The position numbers and the translations under genes were made by a program. A stretch of DNA of 64,000 nt from the sequence record PQ066597.1, one strand, 5' to 3'. Positions 33,451-46,262 of this stretch are shown in pieces (within the stretch, counting starts at the first letter, position 1; each line of letters starts with the position of its first letter). The notes under the pieces are model-generated. The model was not told the origin of the DNA and made no database searches. It worked only from the letters and a program-made list of their open reading frames with translations.

Positions 33451-33921
33451 ATGGCCGGAAATAATACATACAAAGGTCAATACTTTGTAAAGAATAGAGA
33501 AAAATATAAAGGAGACCCAAAAAAGGTTACCTACCGTAGTTCGTGGGAAAAGTATATAATGGAGATGTTGGATAATAATCCAGACGTTAGATATTGGAAC
33601 AGCGAATGTATGGTCATTCCGTATTTTTCTAATGCAGATGGAAAGAAACGACGTTATTTTATGGATATGTGGATACAGTGGTCAGACGGTTCTATTTCTC
33701 TCTGGGAAGTTAAGCCTAAAAAAGAATGTTTTCCACCAGTACCACCAAAAAGAAATACATTAAAAGCAAAAAATGCTTATATTCAAGCTGTGTATACATG
33801 GCAAGTCAATAACGACAAATGGAAAACCACCGCTGAATTATGTAAGAAAAAAGGGTGGAGATTTAATATAATTAATGAGGACTCATTGAGAGCAATGGGT
33901 TTCAAAGGACTTACTAAATGA
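33451..33921 (+). CDS. 4: head completion nuclease gp4
   Basis: YKG.Y.VKNREKYKGD...YRSSWE; RRYFMDMW; EVKPKKE; VNNDKW. Confidence 0.95.
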   Translation: MAGNNTYKGQYFVKNREKYKGDPKKVTYRSSWEKYIMEMLDNNPDVRYWNSECMVIPYFSNADGKKRRYFMDMWIQWSDGSISLWEVKPKKECFPPVPPKRNTLKAKNAYIQAVYTWQVNNDKWKTTAELCKKKGWRFNIINEDSLRAMGFKGLTK

Positions 33922-34916
33922 TATTCGAAATAACGGAACGTGCAGAGTCCACAACAGAAAAACGCAATAGAAAACAATGGATTGATGTTGGTGTTGATTA
34001 TATGAACGCCAAGAAAAAGAACCCAAGTCTTACTGCAAAGAAATATGCAGAGGAAAAAGGGTTGAATTATGAAACATTCAGTAGAGCAATGCGCAGACAC
34101 AGAGAAGAAATAAAGACTTATTATTCTCTGGTAAACCCAAACAAGAATAAACAACAATGGATTGAGCTTGGTGTTGATTATTTGACACAAAAAGAAAAGA
34201 GTAGCATTACTCTAAAAAATTATATTGAAGGACGTGGACTTAATAAAGAAACTACGGAGCGGGCATTTAGAAGATTCAAGCAAGATATTCTACTGGCTAA
34301 GAAGTTAAAAGATGCGCAAATAAGCGGAAGAAAACTATCTAAAGCCGAAAAATATCAGATGTTGTTGGCTGACTTTAGAAATAAAGTAAGACAACACGAA
34401 AAAGAGCCTGTAAAGTCTCAGAAGAAGTCAACGGAATGGTTTAACAATTTCATAAAGAAAAACGTTCGTGGTCACCAAGTAACAAGACCAATTGCTGGAC
34501 GATTGTATACTTTCGCATATGACGCAAAACATAAGGCAACACTACCATACTGGGATAAATTCCCCCTGATCGTATATCTTGGCCTAAGTGCAAAACACAA
34601 AGGTTTGATGTTGGGTCTCAACCTTCACTACATCCCGATCAAAGCCCGTAAAGAATTTATGGAAGAGTTGCTGAAACATGCAACCACAGAGAGGATTACC
34701 AACCGTACATCCCTAAATATCAACTGGGGTAAGGTTAAGGGAATGAGAGGTGCAGACCATATGATCAAAGCGTATTTGCCGGGTCATATTAAGGGTCCAT
34801 TAATGGAGATTAAACCGCAGGATTGGAGTTCTGTTATTAATCTACCGACTCAACGGTTTGTATCTGGTGTTCCTCCGAAGACCTATAATACGAATTCCGT
34901 TTGGAGATCATACTAA
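33918..34916 (+). CDS. 2: DNA end protector gp2
   Basis: GRLYTFAYDAKHKATLPYWDKFPL; GLNLHYIP; IKAYLPGH. Confidence 0.95.
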   Translation: MIFEITERAESTTEKRNRKQWIDVGVDYMNAKKKNPSLTAKKYAEEKGLNYETFSRAMRRHREEIKTYYSLVNPNKNKQQWIELGVDYLTQKEKSSITLKNYIEGRGLNKETTERAFRRFKQDILLAKKLKDAQISGRKLSKAEKYQMLLADFRNKVRQHEKEPVKSQKKSTEWFNNFIKKNVRGHQVTRPIAGRLYTFAYDAKHKATLPYWDKFPLIVYLGLSAKHKGLMLGLNLHYIPIKARKEFMEELLKHATTERITNRTSLNINWGKVKGMRGADHMIKAYLPGHIKGPLMEIKPQDWSSVINLPTQRFVSGVPPKTYNTNSVWRSY

Positions 34917-35857
34917 TGAACTTAATACCACCTATTCCAACCATAGATAGTATGATAGATAGTACTATCGGGTTTGGTGAAGATTTATTAAACGATGGTG
35001 GGGATGCAAGCGAGATCCCCGACCTAACTAGGTTTATGCGGAAAGTTGAAAATACTGATCTGGCTAGACCGAACATGTTTATTGTAAGGTTCGGAGATTT
35101 CCGAACCTCTATATTCAGTGATGGTGTTTTTGATAGGGATTTACCAATATTTCCGGACTCCGGCAGCGGGATGGACGTCAATGATAGTCTGTTCTCTGGT
35201 ACAAGTTATGCTTGGCACAGAATCCAAGACGTTGCATTGGGACAAGCACACAAAATCCTCACGCCTAGCATGAAGAAGATTTTTGGTGCTTGGGACCCGT
35301 CCTTGGTCCGGATCATACCGGGAGCAGGAGAGATCCTTGATGGATTTTTGGGAACTGATTACGATGTAAACAGAGATCTAGCATTAATGGTAAAAAGCGT
35401 CGGACTCCCTAGTTCTACTTTGGAAACGACAATCAACCGTACAGACAAACTACCTCGACACGAAGTAAGAGGTAGAAACTACGGAACCATGAGTATGACG
35501 TTTTACTGTTCCCCTTCTTATGAGGAACGTTCTTTGATGTTAACATGGCAGAATACAATTGTCAACCCAAGAAATGGACAATTTGGATTTTATAATACGT
35601 ATGCAAAGGATATTGACGTCATCACGTTAGACCGTCATGGAGTTAAGCAATCCACTGTACATAATACAGGGTGCTTTCCCATAGAGGTAGGTGAAGTTCA
35701 ACTAGATTTTGAGAACAATTCTCAGGTAGCAACCTTTACCGTCACATTCGCTGTATCAACTACAGTGCATGTTCCTACTAAGGGTGAAGAGAACACCATC
35801 GACTCTATAGAGAGTATCATAAGACGTACTACAGGCGTTGTGAAAGCCATTCGTTAA
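34916..35857 (+). CDS. 54: baseplate-tail tube initiator gp54
   Basis: DLARPNMFIV, tube-like fold, CFPIEVGEVQLDFENNSQVATFTVTF. Confidence 0.85.
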   Translation: MNLIPPIPTIDSMIDSTIGFGEDLLNDGGDASEIPDLTRFMRKVENTDLARPNMFIVRFGDFRTSIFSDGVFDRDLPIFPDSGSGMDVNDSLFSGTSYAWHRIQDVALGQAHKILTPSMKKIFGAWDPSLVRIIPGAGEILDGFLGTDYDVNRDLALMVKSVGLPSSTLETTINRTDKLPRHEVRGRNYGTMSMTFYCSPSYEERSLMLTWQNTIVNPRNGQFGFYNTYAKDIDVITLDRHGVKQSTVHNTGCFPIEVGEVQLDFENNSQVATFTVTFAVSTTVHVPTKGEENTIDSIESIIRRTTGVVKAIR

Positions 35858-35861
35858 TACT

Positions 35862-35886
35862 AAGCCATCCTACGGGGTGGCTTTTT
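35862..35886 (+). terminator. intrinsic terminator after gp54
   Basis: AAGCCATCC-TACG-GGGTGGCTT-TTT. Confidence 0.8.
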
Positions 35887-36085: not shown

Positions 36086-36871
36086 ATGACAAACAAAACC
36101 ACAATTGACAAGAGTGTACTTCTTGCTGCTATGCAGAAAAACGTACAGCAGACCAATGTAACTTTATCAGATGGTAGAAAGATCAAGGTTCGTGCTTTCT
36201 TGATGAAAGAAATGAAACTGTTGATGTTAGCTAACGAAGCCAATACTGGAATCGATGATGCAATCATCCAAATCGTAAAAAACTGTATCCTAACTGATAA
36301 TGTTGATGTAGACCTTTTACCTGTGTTTGACTTGGAAGCAGTTTATCTAGCTTTGTATAAGTTATCAAAAGCAAGTCCTACTGTTCCGGTTATGTTTACT
36401 TGCGCCAACGAAATTCTTGATGAAGATGGTAATGTTCAATATGACCAATATGGTGAAATTATTCGTTGTGGCTCTGATATCAAAGTAAACGTAAACTTGA
36501 ATAACGCTAAATTATCGGATGCACCAGATAACAAAATTGTTCTGAATGAGAACATGACAGTTTATATGAGATATCCTAATATCAGCGAGGTTGAATATTT
36601 CAACGTAGAAGTTGAGTCCGACTTGTTTAACTTAATCAATCGCTGTATTGACGAAGTTCATATGGGAGATCAGGTTGTTAAGGTTGGTGTTGATATTCCG
36701 TATGAGGATATTTCTGAAATTATGGAATACGCCGATTCAGTTGCTTTGACCAAAATGGGTAAATTTGTAACATCCCTCCCCCAACATACTCTAAATATAC
36801 CTGTAAAGTGTAAAAAATGTGGACACCAAGAAATTGTTACACTTAAAGGGGTAGAAAGTTTTTTCGCATAA
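36086..36871 (+). CDS. 26: baseplate hub assembly chaperone gp26-like
   Basis: VRAFLMKEMKLLM, LPVFDLE..YL.L, MRYP, CKKCGH..., ends GVESFFA. Confidence 0.88.
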   Translation: MTNKTTIDKSVLLAAMQKNVQQTNVTLSDGRKIKVRAFLMKEMKLLMLANEANTGIDDAIIQIVKNCILTDNVDVDLLPVFDLEAVYLALYKLSKASPTVPVMFTCANEILDEDGNVQYDQYGEIIRCGSDIKVNVNLNNAKLSDAPDNKIVLNENMTVYMRYPNISEVEYFNVEVESDLFNLINRCIDEVHMGDQVVKVGVDIPYEDISEIMEYADSVALTKMGKFVTSLPQHTLNIPVKCKKCGHQEIVTLKGVESFFA

Positions 36872-37035
36872 CGCTTGTTAACCATACCATATACGATCAT
36901 TTTAATACGGTATATAAGCTTAGAAAAGATGGATGGAGCCATTCGGACCTTGAGGATATGACCCCCTTTGAATTTGGTGTTTATGTTCACCTCTACCTAA
37001 ACGATCTCAAAGAACAGGCGAGAGAAAAGGACTAA
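36859..37035 (+). CDS. 51: gp51-like short frame with no canonical start; probable -1 frameshift extension of gp26
   Basis: Hand translation FFRITLVNHTIYDHFNTVYKLRKDGWSHSDLEDMTPFEFGVYVHLYLNDLKEQAREKD*; resembles the short gp51 family (..YSLTEIENMIPWER..Y); stop abuts the gp29 start. Confidence 0.7.
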   Translation, partial: FFRITLVNHTIYDHFNTVYKLRKDGWSHSDLEDMTPFEFGVYVHLYLNDLKEQAREKD

Positions 37036-38898
37036 GTGATGATTGACAAGCAGAAACAGAACGAACTTGATAAATCGGTTCGAGATGTCACGGATGCTAT
37101 GGATATTGTTTCTGATTCGATGCTTAAGTTGGACGACAAGACAGAAAAGTTGTCCAACTCAACAAAAGACCTTACCGCGTCTTATGATATTACCTCTGAT
37201 TCCAGTCTGGAAGTCGCACAAGAACAAGAAAAATTAGCGAACCAGATAAAAGGTGCCAGAAAGGATAATAAGCGTAGTAATAAGGTTGAAAACGAATTAG
37301 TTTCAGCTAGACGAAAGCAACTGGAAGACATTTTAAATAATAAACAACCCCTAGTGGATTATAGCCAAGGTGTAAAAAGTCAGAACCCGGAACAGGGGGA
37401 AACTGCCAAACCTATGCAGGAAGACACTAGGGAGACTTTGAAAGAATTTATACAACGCGAAGTTGGTGATCGTCGTGAATTTGTGGAAAATTTCAAAGAA
37501 GAAAATCAAAAAACTGGTAAATTTGTTCGAGAGATAGCAAAAAAAGCTAATATAGTTGATCGAATGAAGAAATCAGAAACATCAGCAACAGCGAAAATAC
37601 TTGGTCATACTATGTCCGCTGGTATCGGTATGGTTACTGGAACCATAAACGATTTGTTATCAACTATTCCCGGTTATAATCAGGCCGCTAATGCAACGAA
37701 GTTTGTTGGTGGGTCTATTATTGATGCACATAACGCACGTAAGGAAAAGAAATTAGATGCAAAAGCGAATGCGGCTTATGAAGAGAAGAAGGCTGATGCT
37801 ACTTCTAGATTCCAACAGATCCCACAAAACAAACCAGAAGACAAAGTAAAAACAGATAGAAATAACCAAGAGCAAAAGAAAGAAAGACAAGAAAATGGAA
37901 GAGAACGAGAGAACAACGAAAAGCGTCATAAAAGCTTAATCGATGTTCTTAAAGGTATCCAGATGTCCATGTTGATCGGTAAACTGATTGGTGGTGTTGG
38001 ATTTGTTCTTAGTGGTCTTGTTTCTGGTATCAGTGTTCTATCTGGTGCGGTTCTTGGTTTGGCCCCTATGATTGCGGGTGCCCTATCTGCTGCTGTTGGT
38101 GGTTTAATTGCTAAGTTCTCTGGGATGTTTGATAAGATACCGGGATTGGGAAGTAAGACCCCCACACCATCGTCTGGTGGGGTTAATCCAAACGATGTAT
38201 CGAAGGATCCTAAGAAGTCCCCGAAAACTACACAACCGGATGGAAAGAAGCCACCCACACCAGAACCAAGACCGGGACAACCCGCAAAAATTGAGACACC
38301 TAAAACAAAGACTCCTACCCCAAAAGGTAAGGCTGGTATTTTGTCAAAGGCAGCGGAACTTGGTAAAAAAGGTTGGTCTGTCGCTGCTGATGCAGCAAAA
38401 TCAGCCTCTAAATTTATACCAAAAAGCGCATTAACTGGCGCAGGTATGGCGGTACGTGTCGCTGGTAGAGCAATTCCTTTTGTTGGTGCTGGCTTGATGG
38501 CTTATGAGTTGTATAACTTCGCCAAAGAGAACCCAGAGCTGTTAGATAAGGGTGTTGATGCTGCTAAGGGTGCTTGGGAAAGTCTTACTGGATCATTATT
38601 TGGGAAAGCTAATGCTAGTGAAGCTCAACCGGAATCTAAATTAGGGAATGAAATTAAGGCTGGTGAAACCGAGCCTGTATTTAAAACCCTTGAGAAAAGA
38701 AATCAAGAGGTTGAAGAATTCCGAGCTAAACAACAACGTGAAAAGGAAGAACGAGACGCACGACGTCAAGAAGGTGCTTTAATGGCTGCTGTAAATAATA
38801 CCACATATAACAGTATGAATTCCGTTCTACCGTCTGGCTTTGGTGAATTTAGACCAGATCAACCGCAATATTCATATGGAGTTCAACCGTCAACATGA
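37036..38898 (+). CDS. 29: tape measure/baseplate hub gp29-like
   Basis: 620 aa, coiled-coil N-terminus, hydrophobic Gly/Ala segment, Pro-rich linker; position between gp26/51 and gp3. Confidence 0.75.
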   Translation: MMIDKQKQNELDKSVRDVTDAMDIVSDSMLKLDDKTEKLSNSTKDLTASYDITSDSSLEVAQEQEKLANQIKGARKDNKRSNKVENELVSARRKQLEDILNNKQPLVDYSQGVKSQNPEQGETAKPMQEDTRETLKEFIQREVGDRREFVENFKEENQKTGKFVREIAKKANIVDRMKKSETSATAKILGHTMSAGIGMVTGTINDLLSTIPGYNQAANATKFVGGSIIDAHNARKEKKLDAKANAAYEEKKADATSRFQQIPQNKPEDKVKTDRNNQEQKKERQENGRERENNEKRHKSLIDVLKGIQMSMLIGKLIGGVGFVLSGLVSGISVLSGAVLGLAPMIAGALSAAVGGLIAKFSGMFDKIPGLGSKTPTPSSGGVNPNDVSKDPKKSPKTTQPDGKKPPTPEPRPGQPAKIETPKTKTPTPKGKAGILSKAAELGKKGWSVAADAAKSASKFIPKSALTGAGMAVRVAGRAIPFVGAGLMAYELYNFAKENPELLDKGVDAAKGAWESLTGSLFGKANASEAQPESKLGNEIKAGETEPVFKTLEKRNQEVEEFRAKQQREKEERDARRQEGALMAAVNNTTYNSMNSVLPSGFGEFRPDQPQYSYGVQPST

Positions 38899-40715: not shown

Positions 40716-41729
40716 ATGTCTAAGATGTTTAATGAGCTGTTTGAATCTATGACTCAAGCAGTCGCGATGAAGGCTCTTGGTTTGACTGGTAAGTTTACTG
40801 ATGACCAACTAAAGGCTGCATATCGCAAGGCAGCAAAGGATAACCACCCAGACCGTGGTGGTTCCACCGAAAAAATGCAGGCAGTAAACCAAGCTTACGA
40901 AGAACTGAAAAAATCCGGTTCTCCTGCAACCCAAGAAGCTACATGGGCACAGCGAAAACAGAAACAGGAAGAAGAGAAACATGTTGTAACTAACTTCGTA
41001 ACCCATATGTTTGACAAGTTTTTTGATACTCAGGCTTATCTCGACTACTTCCAAAAGATGAGCGGTAAAAAGTTCACATTTGAACGTAAAATTACCGTTG
41101 GTACTTGGGGAACTTCTTCTGTTGATTATAAATTTACGTCGGAAGACCGTACAGTTTTCTTTGATCTGAATGCAATGGCTCATGTGTTTATCACCAAAGC
41201 TCTGGGTGCAGGTATCGACAAACCTGAACTGGATAAGATGGGTATCATGACTGAGGTTCTGATTGACCGTAAAAAGGTTAAGATGACTCAGAGCAATTAT
41301 AACCAATCTGAAACTGAAAAGTTTATGAAGGATCCGAAAATCCTTTTCCCGGAAACCAAGCTAAAGAAAGCTTTTTCTGGTGATAAAAAGGTCAAGCCGC
41401 TCAAGAAAGCCGATTATGTTCTTTTCGTCAAAAAAGAGCTTGAAGGGAAACATTTGGGTGGTGATGATTTCGCAGTTGACATCGGTAATGGTTCTGTGAT
41501 TTACTTTTCTCGTATGACGTGGATGAGGAAGGGTGTATGGAATATCAGTGGTCGAACCGGTTCTAAAGAACGTTGGTCTGTAACTACTCCTTTCTATGAG
41601 ATAGAAACCCCGGAAAACATGGATGTGATGAAAGAACTTGTTCAGACCATGAAATCCCATAGTTCTTCTGGTGGAGCACAGATGGAAGCTCTTGTCAAGA
41701 AATTTATGTTGAAAGCTAACAAAGTTTAA
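40716..41729 (+). CDS. J-domain (DnaJ-like) protein, late promoter
   Basis: LGL...QLKAAYRKAAKDNHPDRGGSTEKMQAVNQAYEEL with HPD motif; CTAAATA at 40686. Confidence 0.9.
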   Translation: MSKMFNELFESMTQAVAMKALGLTGKFTDDQLKAAYRKAAKDNHPDRGGSTEKMQAVNQAYEELKKSGSPATQEATWAQRKQKQEEEKHVVTNFVTHMFDKFFDTQAYLDYFQKMSGKKFTFERKITVGTWGTSSVDYKFTSEDRTVFFDLNAMAHVFITKALGAGIDKPELDKMGIMTEVLIDRKKVKMTQSNYNQSETEKFMKDPKILFPETKLKKAFSGDKKVKPLKKADYVLFVKKELEGKHLGGDDFAVDIGNGSVIYFSRMTWMRKGVWNISGRTGSKERWSVTTPFYEIETPENMDVMKELVQTMKSHSSSGGAQMEALVKKFMLKANKV

Positions 41730-43484: not shown

Positions 43485-43577
43485 GCGTGAGTGGCGAAGT
43501 TGGTTGAAACGCATCGGACTTAAAATCCGATACTGCATAATGGCACATCGTGGGTTCGATTCCCACCTCACGCACCA
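43485..43577 (+). tRNA. tRNA-Leu(TAA)
   Basis: GCGTGAG/CTCACGC acceptor, TCGGA-CTTAAAA-TCCGA, long variable arm, encoded CCA. Confidence 0.95.
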
Positions 43578-43666
43578 AAATACGAGATGATAAACTCAAA
43601 TTCCTTTTTGTTGAATGAGCTTTTTGGACGTTAAACGAGTTTATCATCTCACAAATTCAATATGAG

Positions 43667-43813
43667 ATGCTTAATATGAACGTATATATCAGAAATTACA
43701 TGTGTGGAGTCCTTTGGGGTAGTATCTTCAACGAAGATCACTGTAAAGGTAAATTTGTAAAGATTATGCGTGGTAAACATTTGAAGCCTTTCTATCAAAA
43801 ATCGAGATATTAA
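43667..43813 (+). CDS. 48-aa hypothetical protein (not in ORF track)
   Basis: MLNMNVYIRNYMCGVLWGSIF...QKSRY*, stop adjacent to the next ATG. Confidence 0.5.
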   Translation: MLNMNVYIRNYMCGVLWGSIFNEDHCKGKFVKIMRGKHLKPFYQKSRY

Positions 43814-43814
43814 A

Positions 43815-44204
43815 ATGAAAGTGAAGCTTGGGGCCTATAACCTTAATGAAAAAAGTTCATTGGTTAATACGAATGGTGTAAAATTCATTTTGAATGAACA
43901 AGTTATAGATGAGTTTTCTAAAAAACTACCTATTCTAATCAATTTTGGTCAAAAATGTTTTAACATCGATAATGTCAGAGATACACCAGACCCGGTTGGT
44001 ATTCTAAATTCCATAGAAACTTACAAGAAAGATAATATCATTATTGTTACTGGTGATATAGAAATAACCAATGACAAAGTGTATGATGTTCATGGATGCC
44101 TTCCTTCTTTTTGTGTTCGGTCTCTGGCTAATGGTGACGGTGATACTTATAAAGTTATCGAGATCGTTGCGTGGGATATGGAAATATATGAAGGTTTATC
44201 ATGA
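43815..44204 (+). CDS. hypothetical protein, weak resemblance to prohead protease fold
   Basis: ORF track; N.NG and PSFCVRSL segments. Confidence 0.6.
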   Translation: MKVKLGAYNLNEKSSLVNTNGVKFILNEQVIDEFSKKLPILINFGQKCFNIDNVRDTPDPVGILNSIETYKKDNIIIVTGDIEITNDKVYDVHGCLPSFCVRSLANGDGDTYKVIEIVAWDMEIYEGLS

Positions 44205-44599
44205 ATAAACATGATATTCATCTCATTGGTATTAGTAAGTTTATAAAGAAAGGTCTTACTGTGGTTCAATCAAGTTTGATCTTCAAACAAACCAGTGAAG
44301 AATGGAAAAATATCCATGATGTTGATGTAGACAAGATTTATTGCTATATTAACAACGAGGGAAAGGATATCTACGCAATTGGTAGACTAAAATCCTGTTG
44401 CGGACCTTGGTTGAGTGTTAGTTGTCGGTCTCTCCGTAAAAAAGGTTATATAGCATTTGACTTTAACGATGAAATTGAGATACCATATGGTTCAGGGATG
44501 AAAACTGCTTATAGGGTATTGTTTTCTGACACCCCTAAATACGAGTATGATGAAGAAGCTAGACATCCAGTCGCTTACTTCGAAAAATACTTCAAATAA
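44201..44599 (+). CDS. hypothetical protein
   Basis: ATGA overlap with the upstream ORF. Confidence 0.7.
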   Translation: MNKHDIHLIGISKFIKKGLTVVQSSLIFKQTSEEWKNIHDVDVDKIYCYINNEGKDIYAIGRLKSCCGPWLSVSCRSLRKKGYIAFDFNDEIEIPYGSGMKTAYRVLFSDTPKYEYDEEARHPVAYFEKYFK

Positions 44600-44643
44600 A
44601 AGTTAAACATCCTTTCTAACTGTGATATGATGTTTATATAAAT
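44594..44643 (+). promoter_or_regulatory. early-type promoter, copy 2 of the 50-bp direct repeat
   Basis: Identical to 43433-43482; immediately precedes tRNA-Arg. Confidence 0.75.
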
Positions 44644-44644
44644 T

Positions 44645-44721
44645 GCGCTGTTAGCTCAGTTGGATAGAGCAACGTTCTTCTAAAGCGTGGGTCACTGGTT
44701 CGAATCCAGTACGGCGCACCA
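44645..44721 (+). tRNA. tRNA-Arg(TCT)
   Basis: GCGCTGT/ACGGCGC, ACGTT-CTTCTAA-AGCGT, GGTTCGAATCC, CCA. Confidence 0.95.
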
Positions 44722-44805
44722 CGGGATGTGGTGAAATTGGCAGACACACTAGATTTAGGTTCTAGCGCCATAGGCGTGACGGTTCGAGTCCGTCCATCCC
44801 GACCA
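44722..44805 (+). tRNA. tRNA-Leu(TAG)
   Basis: CGGGATG/CATCCCG, CTAGA-TTTAGGT-TCTAG, variable arm, CCA. Confidence 0.95.
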
Positions 44806-44806
44806 A

Positions 44807-44882
44807 GCGGGTAAGGTGTTTATGGATACATGCAAGCCTTCCAAGTTTGAGTAGACCGGATCGTTACCGGCTACCCGCTCCA
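44807..44882 (+). tRNA. tRNA-Gly(TCC), atypical T-loop
   Basis: GCGGGTA/TACCCGC, U73, CAAGC-CTTCCAA-GTTTG; T-loop ATCGTTA. Confidence 0.85.
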
Positions 44883-44893
44883 AGATTTAAAAT

Positions 44894-44963
44894 TGATGTG
44901 TTACAGCTATCAGCTCACCGTTGAAAGAATACGGATAAGTCGGCTCGACTAAAGAACATATCA
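44894..44963 (+). ncRNA. candidate 70-nt four-way-junction RNA
   Basis: 9-bp closing stem plus three internal hairpins; no CCA or T-loop. Confidence 0.4.
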
Positions 44964-44966
44964 TTT

Positions 44967-45043
44967 GGCCCCTTAGCTCAGTAGGTTAGAGCAGCCGACT
45001 CATAATCGGTTGGTCACTGGTTCGAGTCCAGTAGGGGCCACCA
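44967..45043 (+). tRNA. tRNA-Ile2(CAT), lysidine type
   Basis: GGCCCCT/AGGGGCC A73; near-identical to recalled enterobacterial ileX. Confidence 0.9.
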
Positions 45044-45065
45044 AATTTTTGATGAGAGCTATATT

Positions 45066-45260
45066 ATGTCTGGTATAAAATCCATAATTGAAAATTGGTC
45101 AGTTGGTGATGGTATAATCCACTGGAAAAATGGACGCCATAGTTTAGTAGTCTTTGGGTTTGCTCCAAATGGAGAACCTGCCTTTAAGTTTAAAGGTAAG
45201 AATAAACTTACGTCAGTAAGACAGATTGAAAAATCCATAGTTAATGCATATATTCTATAG
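45066..45260 (+). CDS. hypothetical protein inside the tRNA cluster
   Basis: 64-aa ORF, GAGAG upstream. Confidence 0.55.
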   Translation: MSGIKSIIENWSVGDGIIHWKNGRHSLVVFGFAPNGEPAFKFKGKNKLTSVRQIEKSIVNAYIL

Positions 45261-45425
45261 TCGTAAGCTCTCACTAATTTAATGGTCGTTGACCTTACGA
45301 TAATAATGAAGCGATACAGAGTCCCATCGCTTCTAAAAATATCAAAAGGGATGTTGATGCGCGTATGTAGCCGGGTTATAATGACCAAGATTCATGAAGG
45401 GTGAAAGACCACCCTAAATATTCAT

Positions 45426-45503
45426 AGCGGGGTGGAGAAGTCAGGAGTTCTCACCAGACTCATTATCTGGAAATCGGTGGTTCAAATCCACCCCCCGCTT
45501 CCA
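45426..45503 (+). tRNA. tRNA-Met(CAT), fMet-like acceptor but atypical
   Basis: AGCGGGG/CCCCGCT, CCAGA-CTCATTA-TCTGG, GGTTCAAATCC, CCA. Confidence 0.85.
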
Positions 45504-45504
45504 A

Positions 45505-45581
45505 TGGCGTGTAACTCAGTAGGTTAGAGTGGCGGACTGTTAATCCGTATGTCGTGGGTTCGAATCCCACCTCGCCAGCCA
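45505..45581 (+). tRNA. tRNA-Asn(GTT)
   Basis: GCGGA-CTGTTAA-TCCGT, G73, CCA; one T-T mismatch in the acceptor stem. Confidence 0.92.
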
Positions 45582-45587
45582 AATTCT

Positions 45588-45678
45588 GGATGTTCGGCTA
45601 CGATGGCGGTGTAGCGGCGGACTGTAAATCCGTTCCCTCTGGGTAAACAAGTTGGTTCGAATCCAACAACATCCACCA
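45588..45678 (+). tRNA. tRNA-Tyr(GTA)
   Basis: GGATGTT/AACATCC, GCGGA-CTGTAAA-TCCGT, long variable arm, CCA. Confidence 0.93.
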
Positions 45679-45832
45679 AATAGAAGAAGTTAGAAGACGT
45701 TCTGATAAAATCCTCGGAGACGATGCCCCCTTGCGGTTTTAAACCGTTACGGATAAGCACGGGGTAATCCAAATCAACCATTATAGGGATGTGGTCATCT
45801 GGTATGTAAAATACAGTTGATTTGGAACTTTT

Positions 45833-45908
45833 CGGTGATTAGCGCAGTTGGTAGCGCGTCTGGTTTGGGACCAGAGGGTCACAGGTTCGAGTCCTGTATC
45901 ACCGACCA
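45833..45908 (+). tRNA. tRNA-Pro(TGG)
   Basis: CGGTGAT/ATCACCG, TCTGG-TTTGGGA-CCAGA, CCA. Confidence 0.96.
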
Positions 45909-46186
45909 CTTAGCACAAAGAACGGGTAACGACGTATGCCCCGGAATAAGCCAGCCATAGAGAATCTGGATATCCTGAAACGTGCCTTTAGGTTTCAGGC
46001 GGGATTGGTAGTACAAAGACGATATGGTAACTACCCCTTGACAAGCAGGGTTGAACTTGAGGTAACTGTCCTTTACCAAACAACGAACAGATGGACAAAA
46101 TCGGTTGAACGTCCTTCCTCGATATGATAGCATGTCAACCACATTAGGATATAATCACAGTCTAACGATCCTGATTATAATCCGCT
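45909..46186 (+). ncRNA. candidate structured ncRNA between tRNA-Pro and tRNA-Thr
   Basis: At least 6 hairpins and a possible pseudoknot; no credible ORF. Confidence 0.5.
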
Positions 46187-46262
46187 GCCGAATTAGCTCA
46201 TCTGGTAGAGCACAGCCTTTGTAACGCTGGGGTGGTCCGTTCGAGTCGGACATTCGGCACCA
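46187..46262 (+). tRNA. tRNA-Thr(TGT)
   Basis: GCCGAAT/ATTCGGC, loop TTTGTAA, GTTCGAGTC, CCA; C31-C39 mismatch. Confidence 0.9.

What the first reader, a model, noticed from the sequence alone, without database searches (positions are those of the whole stretch)
36845..37035. Probable programmed -1 frameshift joining gp26 to a start-less gp51 frame, directly before the tape measure gene (lambda G/GT-like)
Seen: gp26 ends AGT TTT TTC GCA TAA, i.e. a T-TTT-TTC heptamer at 36859-36865. The -1 frame is open from 36847 to 37035 and encodes RITLVNHTIYDHFNTVYKLRKDGWSHSDLEDMTPFEFGVYVHLYLNDLKEQAREKD. It has no ATG/GTG/TTG until 36958, which would give only 25 aa with a SD too close to the start. An SD-like AGGGG (36847-36851) lies about 9 nt upstream of the heptamer. 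A hairpin starts 7 nt downstream (GCTTGT 36873-78/ATAAGC 36914-19, stacked on ATACC 36884-88/GGTAT 36909-13). The stop abuts the gp29 GTG. Known: X-XXY-YYZ heptamers with upstream SD and downstream stem drive bacterial -1 shifts (dnaX), and lambda G/GT and P2 E/E+E' chaperone pairs are made this way just upstream of tape measure genes. Inference: a 261-aa gp26 and a 316-aa fusion are both made, so T4-type gp26/gp51 would be the G/GT tail chaperone equivalent. I am not aware of this being described for T4-type phages but cannot check.
Basis: partly seen in the sequence, partly recalled or inferred. Interest (0 to 1): 0.85.

Follow-up and report, generated by a model that had tools for sequence, protein, structure and literature searches.

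The report
Known T4-like tail-chaperone -1 frameshift, unannotated
This Aeromonas T4-like phage almost certainly makes a short and a long form of its baseplate-hub/tail assembly chaperone (gp26 and a gp26-gp51 fusion) by a programmed -1 ribosomal slip on a run of T's; the signal is real and very conserved, but it was already described for T4-like phages in 2022.

Summary
The window is Aeromonas phage vB_AdhaM_G2 (CC2-like, Straboviridae). gp26 (36086-36871) ends one codon after an in-frame T TTT TTC heptamer (36859-36865). The -1 frame stays open to 37035, has no start codon before 36958, and encodes the C-terminal module of T4 gp51.

In 173 related loci, 172 carry T TTT TT[C/T] in this register with a gp51-like -1 extension. 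The one exception is T4, where a full-length gp51 (gp26-like body plus the same C-terminal module) is a separate gene. Four Tevenvirinae genera with that two-gene layout all break the heptamer by synonymous changes. Codon-level conservation, third-position substitution upstream of the only ATG, and the absence of any other gp26/gp51 gene in this genome all support a -1 ribosomal frameshift giving 261-aa and 316-aa products.

The proposed SD-like and hairpin stimulators are not supported as such. The downstream 619/620-aa gene is a tape-measure candidate by position only.

The gp26/gp51 tail-assembly-chaperone assignment and the poly-T slip site were published by Vladimirov, Gautam and Davidson (Virology 2022). 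What remains is an annotation gap, not a discovery.

The parts
36086..36871 (+). gp26, the short form of the hub/tail assembly chaperone (261 aa)
   Evidence: PF12322 T4_baseplate 2.5e-54; phrog_150 7e-59; AF2 model pLDDT 94.7; annotated 'baseplate hub subunit' in PQ066597.
36859..36865 (+). Slippery heptamer T TTT TTC in the gp26 frame, one sense codon before the gp26 stop
   Evidence: T TTT TT[C/T] is present in 172 of 173 related loci. The codon before it always ends in T, across six codons and five amino acids. The first Phe codon is always TTT against a 70% background. The second Phe codon is TTC in 113 of 128 unique junctions against a 30% background.
36865..37035 (+). -1 frame extension (56 codons plus stop) encoding the gp51-type C-terminal module; no start codon of its own before 36958
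   Evidence: phrog_634 'baseplate hub assembly catalyst' 2.2e-12. tblastn finds it in 38 phage records, always starting at the slip site. hhalign against T4 gp51 residues 205-244: E 9e-6. Third-position substitution bias in the 31 codons upstream of the ATG. Unannotated in PQ066597 and NC_019538.
36847..36851 (+).
   Evidence: Present, 7 nt upstream of the heptamer. It overlaps a Gly codon conserved in 127 of 128 junctions and also in Tevenvirinae gp26 genes that lack the frameshift.
36873..36919 (+). Weak AU-rich hairpin 7 nt downstream of the heptamer; a possible but unsupported stimulator
   Evidence: It is the MFE fold at -8.4 kcal/mol, with z = -0.36 to -1.57. Phage 65 has no equivalent. 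No consensus structure or covariation. Across the family, the 60 nt downstream fold more stably than control windows.
37036..38898 (+). 619/620-aa protein (start GTG 37036 or ATG 37039) abutting the extension stop; candidate tape measure / gp29 equivalent
   Evidence: Position after tube-like gp54 and the chaperone pair and before gp3. Size is close to T4 gp29 (590 aa). All-helical, low-confidence model. No homology to T4 gp29, PDB, Pfam or NCBIfam.
34901..35857 (+). gp54-like tail-tube initiator, the upstream neighbour (tube-like gene before the chaperone pair)
   Evidence: phrog_45 tail tube 1e-46; tblastn with T4 gp54 4e-13; annotated gp54 in CC2.

Best explanation
A programmed -1 ribosomal frameshift at U UUU UUC (36859-36865). 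Most ribosomes read on one more codon and terminate, giving the 261-aa gp26. A fraction slip back one base with both Phe-tRNAs re-pairing, read the start-less -1 frame to 37035, and give a 316-aa protein: 260 residues of gp26 plus the 56-residue gp51-type module. The two products are the short and long forms of the hub/tail-tube assembly chaperone, the functional equivalent of lambda G/GT and P2 E/E+E'. They are encoded just before the presumed tape-measure gene. In T4 and other Tevenvirinae the same two forms are encoded by two paralogous genes, 26 and 51, and the slip site is gone. Shown here: the signal, its conservation, the homology and the colinearity. Inferred: that the slip is ribosomal, its efficiency, and the chaperone role of both products in this phage.
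For: (1) T TTT TT[C/T] lies in the gp26 frame in 172 of 173 loci: 13 of 14 clusters at 50% identity and 33 of 34 at 70%. These include Aeromonas, Vibrio, Pseudomonas, Ralstonia, Xanthomonas and Citrobacter phages and cyanophages. (2) Synonymous-site constraint. The preceding codon is always NNT (AGT, GAT, AAT, TCT, GCT, ACT). The first Phe codon is always TTT. Only 4 of 197 Phe-Phe pairs elsewhere in the same genes form such a heptamer. (3) The -1 frame is open for a median of 60 codons past the stop, against 5 for the +1 frame. 156 of 159 non-seed extensions match the extension HMM; the other 3 run off their contigs. (4) There is no conserved start: the first ATG/GTG is more than 15 codons in, or absent, in 79 loci. 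In the window's 31 start-less codons, 15 of 20 differences from phage 65 are at third positions. (5) T4 gp51 matches the gp26 family over its whole length (phrog_150 1e-87, PF12322) and carries the extension module at its C-terminus. Window F260 aligns with gp51 F200, and the extension follows with no gap. (6) Natural control: T4, Mineola, CC31 and EcS1 all have a separate gp51, have gp26 followed by gene 25, and read GAR TTC TTY. (7) No other gp26- or gp51-type segment occurs anywhere in the G2 genome. (8) The T-run is never longer than 7, and C is preferred at position 7 against codon bias. This fits the E. coli hierarchy U_UU.C > U_UU.U and the high efficiency of H_HH.U_UU.Y heptamers (PMC4066793). 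(9) Literature: T4 gp26 and gp51 are hub assembly chaperones, and gp51 is absent from the particle (PMC3004832). T4-like tail-assembly-chaperone genes with poly-T slip sites, and T4's two-gene solution, are attributed to Vladimirov et al. 2022.
Against: There is no expression data of any kind. There is no significant or conserved stimulatory RNA structure in this lineage. The SD-like element is confounded with a Gly codon. Vibrio phage D493 lacks the heptamer and has an ATG overlapping the gp26 stop, and about half of the relatives have a start codon within 5 codons of the slip site. So free-standing expression of the small module may occur in some lineages. Fold similarity of gp26 to solved tail assembly chaperones is only hinted: HK97 gp10 (2ob9), prob 0.44, E 0.9. 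[quoted passage not shown]
Confidence: 0.85

Rival explanations
1. Transcriptional slippage: RNA polymerase loses one base, or gains two, in the T6 run, so a subpopulation of mRNAs encodes the fusion in a single frame. The protein outcome is the same; the recoding level differs.
For: The site is a homopolymer run, T6 in 139 loci and T7 in 33. PMC4066793 notes that runs of seven U are under-represented, possibly because of transcriptional slippage. The title of the 2022 paper mentions a non-translational mechanism, although PRFect reads this as the two-gene solution.
Against: The run is never longer than 7. Position 7 is C in 113 of 128 unique junctions against a 30% background, which shortens the run and is the opposite of what slippage-prone transcription would select. 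The exact X XXY YYZ register with an NNT codon in front is invariant.
Confidence: 0.07
2. Independent translation of a free 56-aa (or shorter) gp51-like peptide, by termination-reinitiation at a near-cognate codon overlapping the gp26 stop or from ATG 36958, with no fusion made.
For: Some relatives have an ATG or TTG at or next to the gp26 stop (Vibrio CZ01, RSP15, PX29). D493 has an ATG and no heptamer. Annotators have called small free 'gp51' ORFs.
Against: The second codon of the extension is ATA, TTA, CTG, TTG, CTA or GTA in close relatives, and several of these are not initiators. The heptamer is invariant where starts are not. Coding constraint extends upstream of ATG 36958. T4 gp51 carries the module fused to a gp26-like body. 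This explanation gives no reason for the synonymous-site conservation of the T-run.
Confidence: 0.06
3. Chance or artefact: the T-run merely reflects a conserved Phe-Phe motif plus AT-rich codon bias, or an assembly indel splits one gene.
For: Phe-Phe is conserved at the protein level even in T4. TTT is the preferred Phe codon at 70%.
Against: Fifteen independently sequenced genomes share the arrangement at 97-100% identity, as do 160 metagenomic contigs. Treating clusters as independent, the chance of keeping NNT plus TTT in all is at most 0.53^13 (about 3e-4) for the 13 clusters at 50% identity, and about 1e-9 for the 33 clusters at 70% identity (my arithmetic). Tevenvirinae keep Phe-Phe but not the heptamer.
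Confidence: 0.01

Closest known systems
T4 gp26 and gp51 (hub assembly chaperones, identified as the tail assembly chaperones of T4-like phages by Vladimirov, Gautam and Davidson, Virology 2022, PMID 34826709)
   Same: Direct homologues. Window gp26 and T4 gp26 and gp51 all match PF12322 and phrog_150. The extension matches the C-terminus of T4 gp51. The short form and long form share a common body.
   Different: In T4 the long form is a separate, diverged paralogous gene on the opposite strand. T4 gp26 is followed by gene 25, and the heptamer is absent. Here one gene plus a frameshift supplies both forms, and no second copy exists in the genome.
Lambda G/GT tail assembly chaperones (Levin et al. 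1993; Xu, Hendrix and Duda 2004, as cited)
   Same: A -1 slip near the 3' end of the upstream ORF. The downstream ORF is start-less. The location is between a tube-type gene and the long helical gene that follows. The two products share an N-terminus.
   Different: No detectable sequence similarity. gp26 is about twice the size and has conserved Cys residues suggesting a zinc ribbon. The heptamer is a different one. Fold similarity to a solved siphovirus chaperone is only a weak hint. The downstream gene is not shown to be a tape measure.
P2 E/E+E' (Christie et al. 2002, as cited)
   Same: The same two-product -1 frameshift logic, in a contractile-tail phage.
   Different: No homology was tested or found here. 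The baseplate context is different.
dnaX-type tripartite -1 signal (upstream SD, heptamer, downstream stem)
   Same: An X XXY YYZ heptamer in a bacterial translation system.
   Different: The upstream G-run cannot be separated from a conserved Gly codon. The downstream stem is weak and not conserved. The slip here extends the protein rather than truncating it.

Membership tests
T4-like gp26/gp51 chaperone pair | Upstream ORF belongs to the gp26 family (PF12322 / phrog_150) | tested here: met
   PF12322 2.5e-54; phrog_150 7e-59. The BFVD fold search returns only gp26/gp51-type proteins, 45 hits at E<=1e-3.
T4-like gp26/gp51 chaperone pair | Downstream frame encodes the gp51 C-terminal module | tested here: met
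   phrog_634 2.2e-12. hhalign against T4 gp51 residues 205-244: E 9e-6, prob 83%. Colinear with gp51 at the junction.
T4-like gp26/gp51 chaperone pair | Poly-T slippery site at the end of the upstream gene in the phages that lack a separate gp51 | tested here: met
   T TTT TTC at 36859-36865. 172 of 173 loci have it. No second gp26/gp51 gene in the genome.
Lambda G/GT-type tail assembly chaperones with -1 frameshift | Heptamer near the 3' end of the upstream ORF, with an overlapping -1 ORF that lacks a conserved start | tested here: met
Lambda G/GT-type tail assembly chaperones with -1 frameshift | Located between the tail tube gene and the tape measure gene | tested here: inconclusive
   Tube-like gp54 lies upstream. 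The downstream 619/620-aa protein is helical and the right size, but has no homology to T4 gp29 or to any named tape measure.
Lambda G/GT-type tail assembly chaperones with -1 frameshift | Tail assembly chaperone fold | tested here: inconclusive
   The model is high-confidence. The best 'prob' hits in PDB are the HK97 tail assembly chaperone 2ob9 (0.44, TMt 0.44, E 0.9) and YqbN 3klu (0.16), and none is significant. One family member hits Phage_TAC_3 weakly, E 0.045.
Lambda G/GT-type tail assembly chaperones with -1 frameshift | Both products are made, the long one in the minority, and neither is present in the virion | not testable with these tools
   There is literature for T4 only: gp51 is required for assembly but absent from the particle (PMC3004832).
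dnaX-type stimulated -1 frameshift | Functional upstream SD-like element | tested here: inconclusive
   A G-rich tetramer is present in 119 of 128 junctions against 11% of control windows. It coincides with a Gly codon that is also kept in frameshift-less Tevenvirinae.
dnaX-type stimulated -1 frameshift | Stable, conserved downstream stem-loop | tested here: not met
   Window z = -0.36 to -1.57. Phage 65 has none. alifold gives no consensus in three sets. There is only a family-wide tendency to lower MFE.

The most novel reading that the evidence does not exclude
The T4-like site works without a dedicated RNA stimulator. A bare U UUU UUY heptamer placed one codon before the stop in most loci (138 of 172), with lineage-specific or no downstream structure, would set the long/short chaperone ratio. 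Lineages such as Vibrio phage D493 would then represent a third solution, a free-standing small module, beside the frameshift and the Tevenvirinae gene duplication. Whether the 2022 paper already covers this I could not check.
Probability: 0.3. Interest if true: 0.4.

Novelty: already known. Interest (0 to 1): 0.25.

Why it matters
The practical value is for annotation. In the G2, CC2 and Aeh1 records the 167-nt stretch is left empty, and in relatives the 'gp51' ORF is given arbitrary starts. Many T4-like genomes therefore lack their long chaperone form.

Biologically, this is a clean case of one function being supplied either by recoding or by a duplicated gene. The Tevenvirinae act as a natural control, because the slip site decays once it is no longer needed. 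It also links the long-puzzling T4 hub proteins gp26 and gp51 to the general tail-assembly-chaperone logic of long-tailed phages. All of this appears to be in print already (Vladimirov et al. 2022).

Tried and rejected
- The search for related loci with the 14-sequence gp26 alignment failed because the alignment was too diverse. Single-protein queries were used instead.
- Sequence searches of gp26, its family profile and the 619-aa protein against PDB gave nothing. NCBIfam gave nothing useful.
- Homology of the downstream protein to T4 gp29 was sought by BLASTP, hhalign, tblastn and phmmer, and none was found. Its homologues are all 'hypothetical'.
- The AF2 model of the downstream protein has pLDDT 43.5, so I did not run a fold search on it.
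- Consensus folding of the junction in three sequence sets gave no structure.
- Rfam found only tRNAs in the window.
- The 2022 Virology paper is not held in the library. I rely on two citing papers for its content.

Full report
IDENTITY AND CONTEXT. The 1.3-kb region is 100% identical to Aeromonas phage vB_AdhaM_G2 (PQ066597) and 97-99.7% identical to 14 other CC2-like Aeromonas phage records. CC2 is classified as Straboviridae, Emmerichvirinae, Ceceduovirus. The gene order on the + strand is:
- gp4, gp2 and a gp54-like tube initiator;
- gp26;
- an unannotated 167-nt stretch;
- a 619/620-aa hypothetical protein;
- gp3, dNMP kinase and a gp57A-like chaperone.
A terminator-like hairpin follows gp54. 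None lies between gp26 and the 619-aa gene.

THE OBSERVATION.
- gp26 (36086-36871) ends AGT TTT TTC GCA TAA.
- The heptamer is at 36859-36865.
- The -1 frame is open from 36847 to 37035, and its only start codon is ATG 36958.
- The extension stop abuts GTG 37036. ATG 37039, used by GenBank, is the better-spaced start.
- The AGGGG is 7 nt, not about 9 nt, from the heptamer.
- The hairpin is the MFE fold but is no better than shuffled sequence.

WHAT THE -1 FRAME ENCODES. The 56-codon extension hits PHROG 634, 'baseplate hub assembly catalyst' (gp51), over the C-terminal half of the profile. tblastn finds it in 38 phage records at 31-100% identity. In seven loci from five Aeromonas phage genera, a cyanophage and a Citrobacter phage, the match starts 7 nt before the end of gp26, exactly as in the window.

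The GenBank records treat this stretch inconsistently:
- unannotated in G2, CC2 and Aeh1;
- started at an internal ATG in phage 65 and phiAS5;
- started at a TTG at the slip site in PX29.

CONSERVATION OF THE SLIP SITE. I collected 13 GenBank loci and 160 IMG/VR contigs that have a complete gp26 3' end.
- 172 of 173 have T TTT TTC (139 loci) or T TTT TTT (33 loci) in the gp26 frame.
- The number of sense codons between the heptamer and the stop is 1 in 138 loci, 8 in 29, 2 in 4 and 0 in 1.
- The -1 frame is open from the heptamer for a median of 60 codons past the stop (minimum 52). The +1 frame is open for a median of 5.
- 156 of 159 non-seed extensions match an HMM of the seed extensions at E<1e-5. 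The other three run off their contigs.
- The arrangement holds in 13 of 14 gp26 clusters at 50% identity and in 33 of 34 at 70%.

The conservation is at the nucleotide level.
- The codon before the run is AGT, GAT, AAT, TCT, GCT or ACT. These are five amino acids, always in the T-ending codon.
- The first Phe codon is always TTT, against a 70% background.
- Only 4 of 197 Phe-Phe pairs elsewhere in the same genes form such a heptamer.

In the 31 codons between the slip site and the window's only ATG, 15 of the 20 differences from phage 65 fall on third positions of the -1 frame, and 27 of 31 residues are identical. So that start-less stretch is translated in the -1 frame. Start codons near the slip site are not conserved: one occurs within 5 codons in 82 loci, and it is more than 15 codons away or absent in 79.

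THE T4 CONTROL. The single locus without the heptamer is T4. There, gene 26 is followed by gene 25, and gene 51 is a 249-aa gene on the other strand.
- T4 gp51 matches the gp26 family profile over its whole length (phrog_150 1e-87; PF12322) and additionally matches PHROG 634 at residues 147-246.
- T4 gp26 matches only the body.
- T4 gp26 and gp51 are detectable paralogues (BLASTP 1e-5).
- In the family alignment, window F260 aligns with gp51 F200. A profile of the extensions aligns with gp51 residues 205-244, with extension residue 1 falling at gp51 residue 201.

T4 gp51 is therefore colinear, without a gap, with the product predicted from a -1 slip on the heptamer. Four Tevenvirinae genera with the two-gene layout (T4, Mineola, CC31, EcS1) all read GAR TTC TTY at the homologous Phe-Phe. 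This breaks the heptamer at two synonymous or neighbouring positions. Xanthomonas phage X1 keeps the heptamer and the extension. Vibrio phage D493 is an exception, with no heptamer and an ATG overlapping the gp26 stop in the -1 frame.

I scanned the G2 genome in five separate pieces. It has exactly one gp26-type segment and one gp51-type segment, both at this locus.

MECHANISM. The heptamer is of the H_HH.U_UU.Y class, which is among the most efficient in E. coli, and U_UU.C ranks above U_UU.U (PMC4066793). The T-run is never longer than 7. Position 7 is C in 113 of 128 unique junctions although TTC is the minority Phe codon. This favours ribosomal over transcriptional slippage.

- The G-run overlaps a Gly codon kept in 127 of 128 junctions, and also in the frameshift-less Tevenvirinae.
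- The hairpin in the window is weak and is absent in phage 65.
- Family-wide, the 60 nt downstream fold more stably than control windows in gp26: -11.8 against -8.3 kcal/mol, mean z -1.44 against -0.47. There is no consensus structure or covariation.
- Some distant relatives (Astolliot, pf16, S-PRM1) do have strong local hairpins.
- The window's cluster of 10 tRNA genes includes no tRNA-Phe.

FUNCTION. T4 gp26 and gp51 are listed as hub assembly chaperones, and gp51 is needed for assembly but is not in the particle (PMC3004832).

A high-confidence model of the window's gp26 (pLDDT 94.7) has no significant PDB neighbour. The highest-probability hits are the HK97 tail assembly chaperone (2ob9) and YqbN (3klu), which is a hint only. 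In BFVD it matches gp26/gp51-type proteins across many myoviruses.

The downstream protein is all-helical in a low-confidence model and is similar in size to T4 gp29. It has no detectable homology to gp29 or to anything named. Calling it the tape measure is therefore an inference from position.

PRIOR KNOWLEDGE. PRFect (PMC10885494) cites Vladimirov, Gautam and Davidson (Virology 2022; 566:9-15) for the finding that some T4-like phages carry a short chaperone gene and a long fusion gene instead of frameshifting. [quoted passage not shown] Sullivan et al. 2010 (PMC3037559) had already noted that cyanophage and vibriophage gp51 lack the first ~200 residues of T4 gp51. The paper itself is not in the library. 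I therefore rate the finding as already known, and this phage as an unannotated instance.

- While planning, I wrote three short motifs from memory in my private reasoning: a 16S rRNA 3'-tail motif and the slippery heptamers of two textbook systems.
- No sequence joining the two frames was built, printed or saved. All queries and translations were single-frame.
- Consensus lines printed by the alignment tools were not used.

Noticed in passing
window 43485-46262: Cluster of 10 tRNA genes (Leu x2, Arg, Gly, Met x2, Asn, Tyr, Pro, Thr) and no tRNA-Phe.
   Followed up: partly
window 33918-34916: The gp2 DNA end protector carries an extra N-terminal HTH-like domain (phrog_32288, residues 1-69) ahead of the gp2 body.
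   Followed up: no
window 33451-33921: The gp4 head-closure protein matches Pfam PF08722, TnsA-like endonuclease N-terminal domain, at 6e-21.
   Followed up: no
window 40716-41729: A 337-aa protein of unknown function with an N-terminal DnaJ (J) domain, PF00226 5e-9.
   Followed up: no
window 35862-35883: Terminator-like GC hairpin plus T-run immediately after gp54, followed by about 200 nt of intergenic DNA before gp26. This suggests that gp26, its extension and the 619-aa gene form their own transcription unit.
   Followed up: no
window 36086-36871 (gp26 residues C67, C106, C128, C242, C245): The gp26 family keeps invariant or nearly invariant cysteines and gives weak zinc-ribbon Pfam hits. 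This suggests a Zn-binding site, which would be unusual for tail assembly chaperones.
   Followed up: partly
L183 (Vibrio phage D493, OZ195930) 2448-2648: A gp26 homologue that ends TCA CTT TTC AAG TAA with no slippery heptamer. An ATG overlapping the stop opens a 59-codon gp51-like -1 frame. This may be a free-standing module.
   Followed up: partly
29 IMG/VR loci among L016-L177: A subgroup has the heptamer 8 sense codons, rather than 1, before the gp26 stop, with the -1 frame still open from the heptamer.
   Followed up: no
L003, L004, L005, L006, L007 (phages 65, phiAS5, Aeh1, PX29, Ahp1): GenBank gives the small 'gp51' ORF inconsistent starts (TTG at the slip site, an ATG at codon 19, an ATG at codon 32) or no annotation at all.
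   Followed up: yes
L012, L013, L014 (Astolliot, pf16, S-PRM1), within about 20 nt downstream of the heptamer: Strong local hairpins (-15 to -22 kcal/mol, z -2.1 to -4.6) lie downstream of the heptamer in some distant relatives, unlike in the window's lineage.
   Followed up: partly
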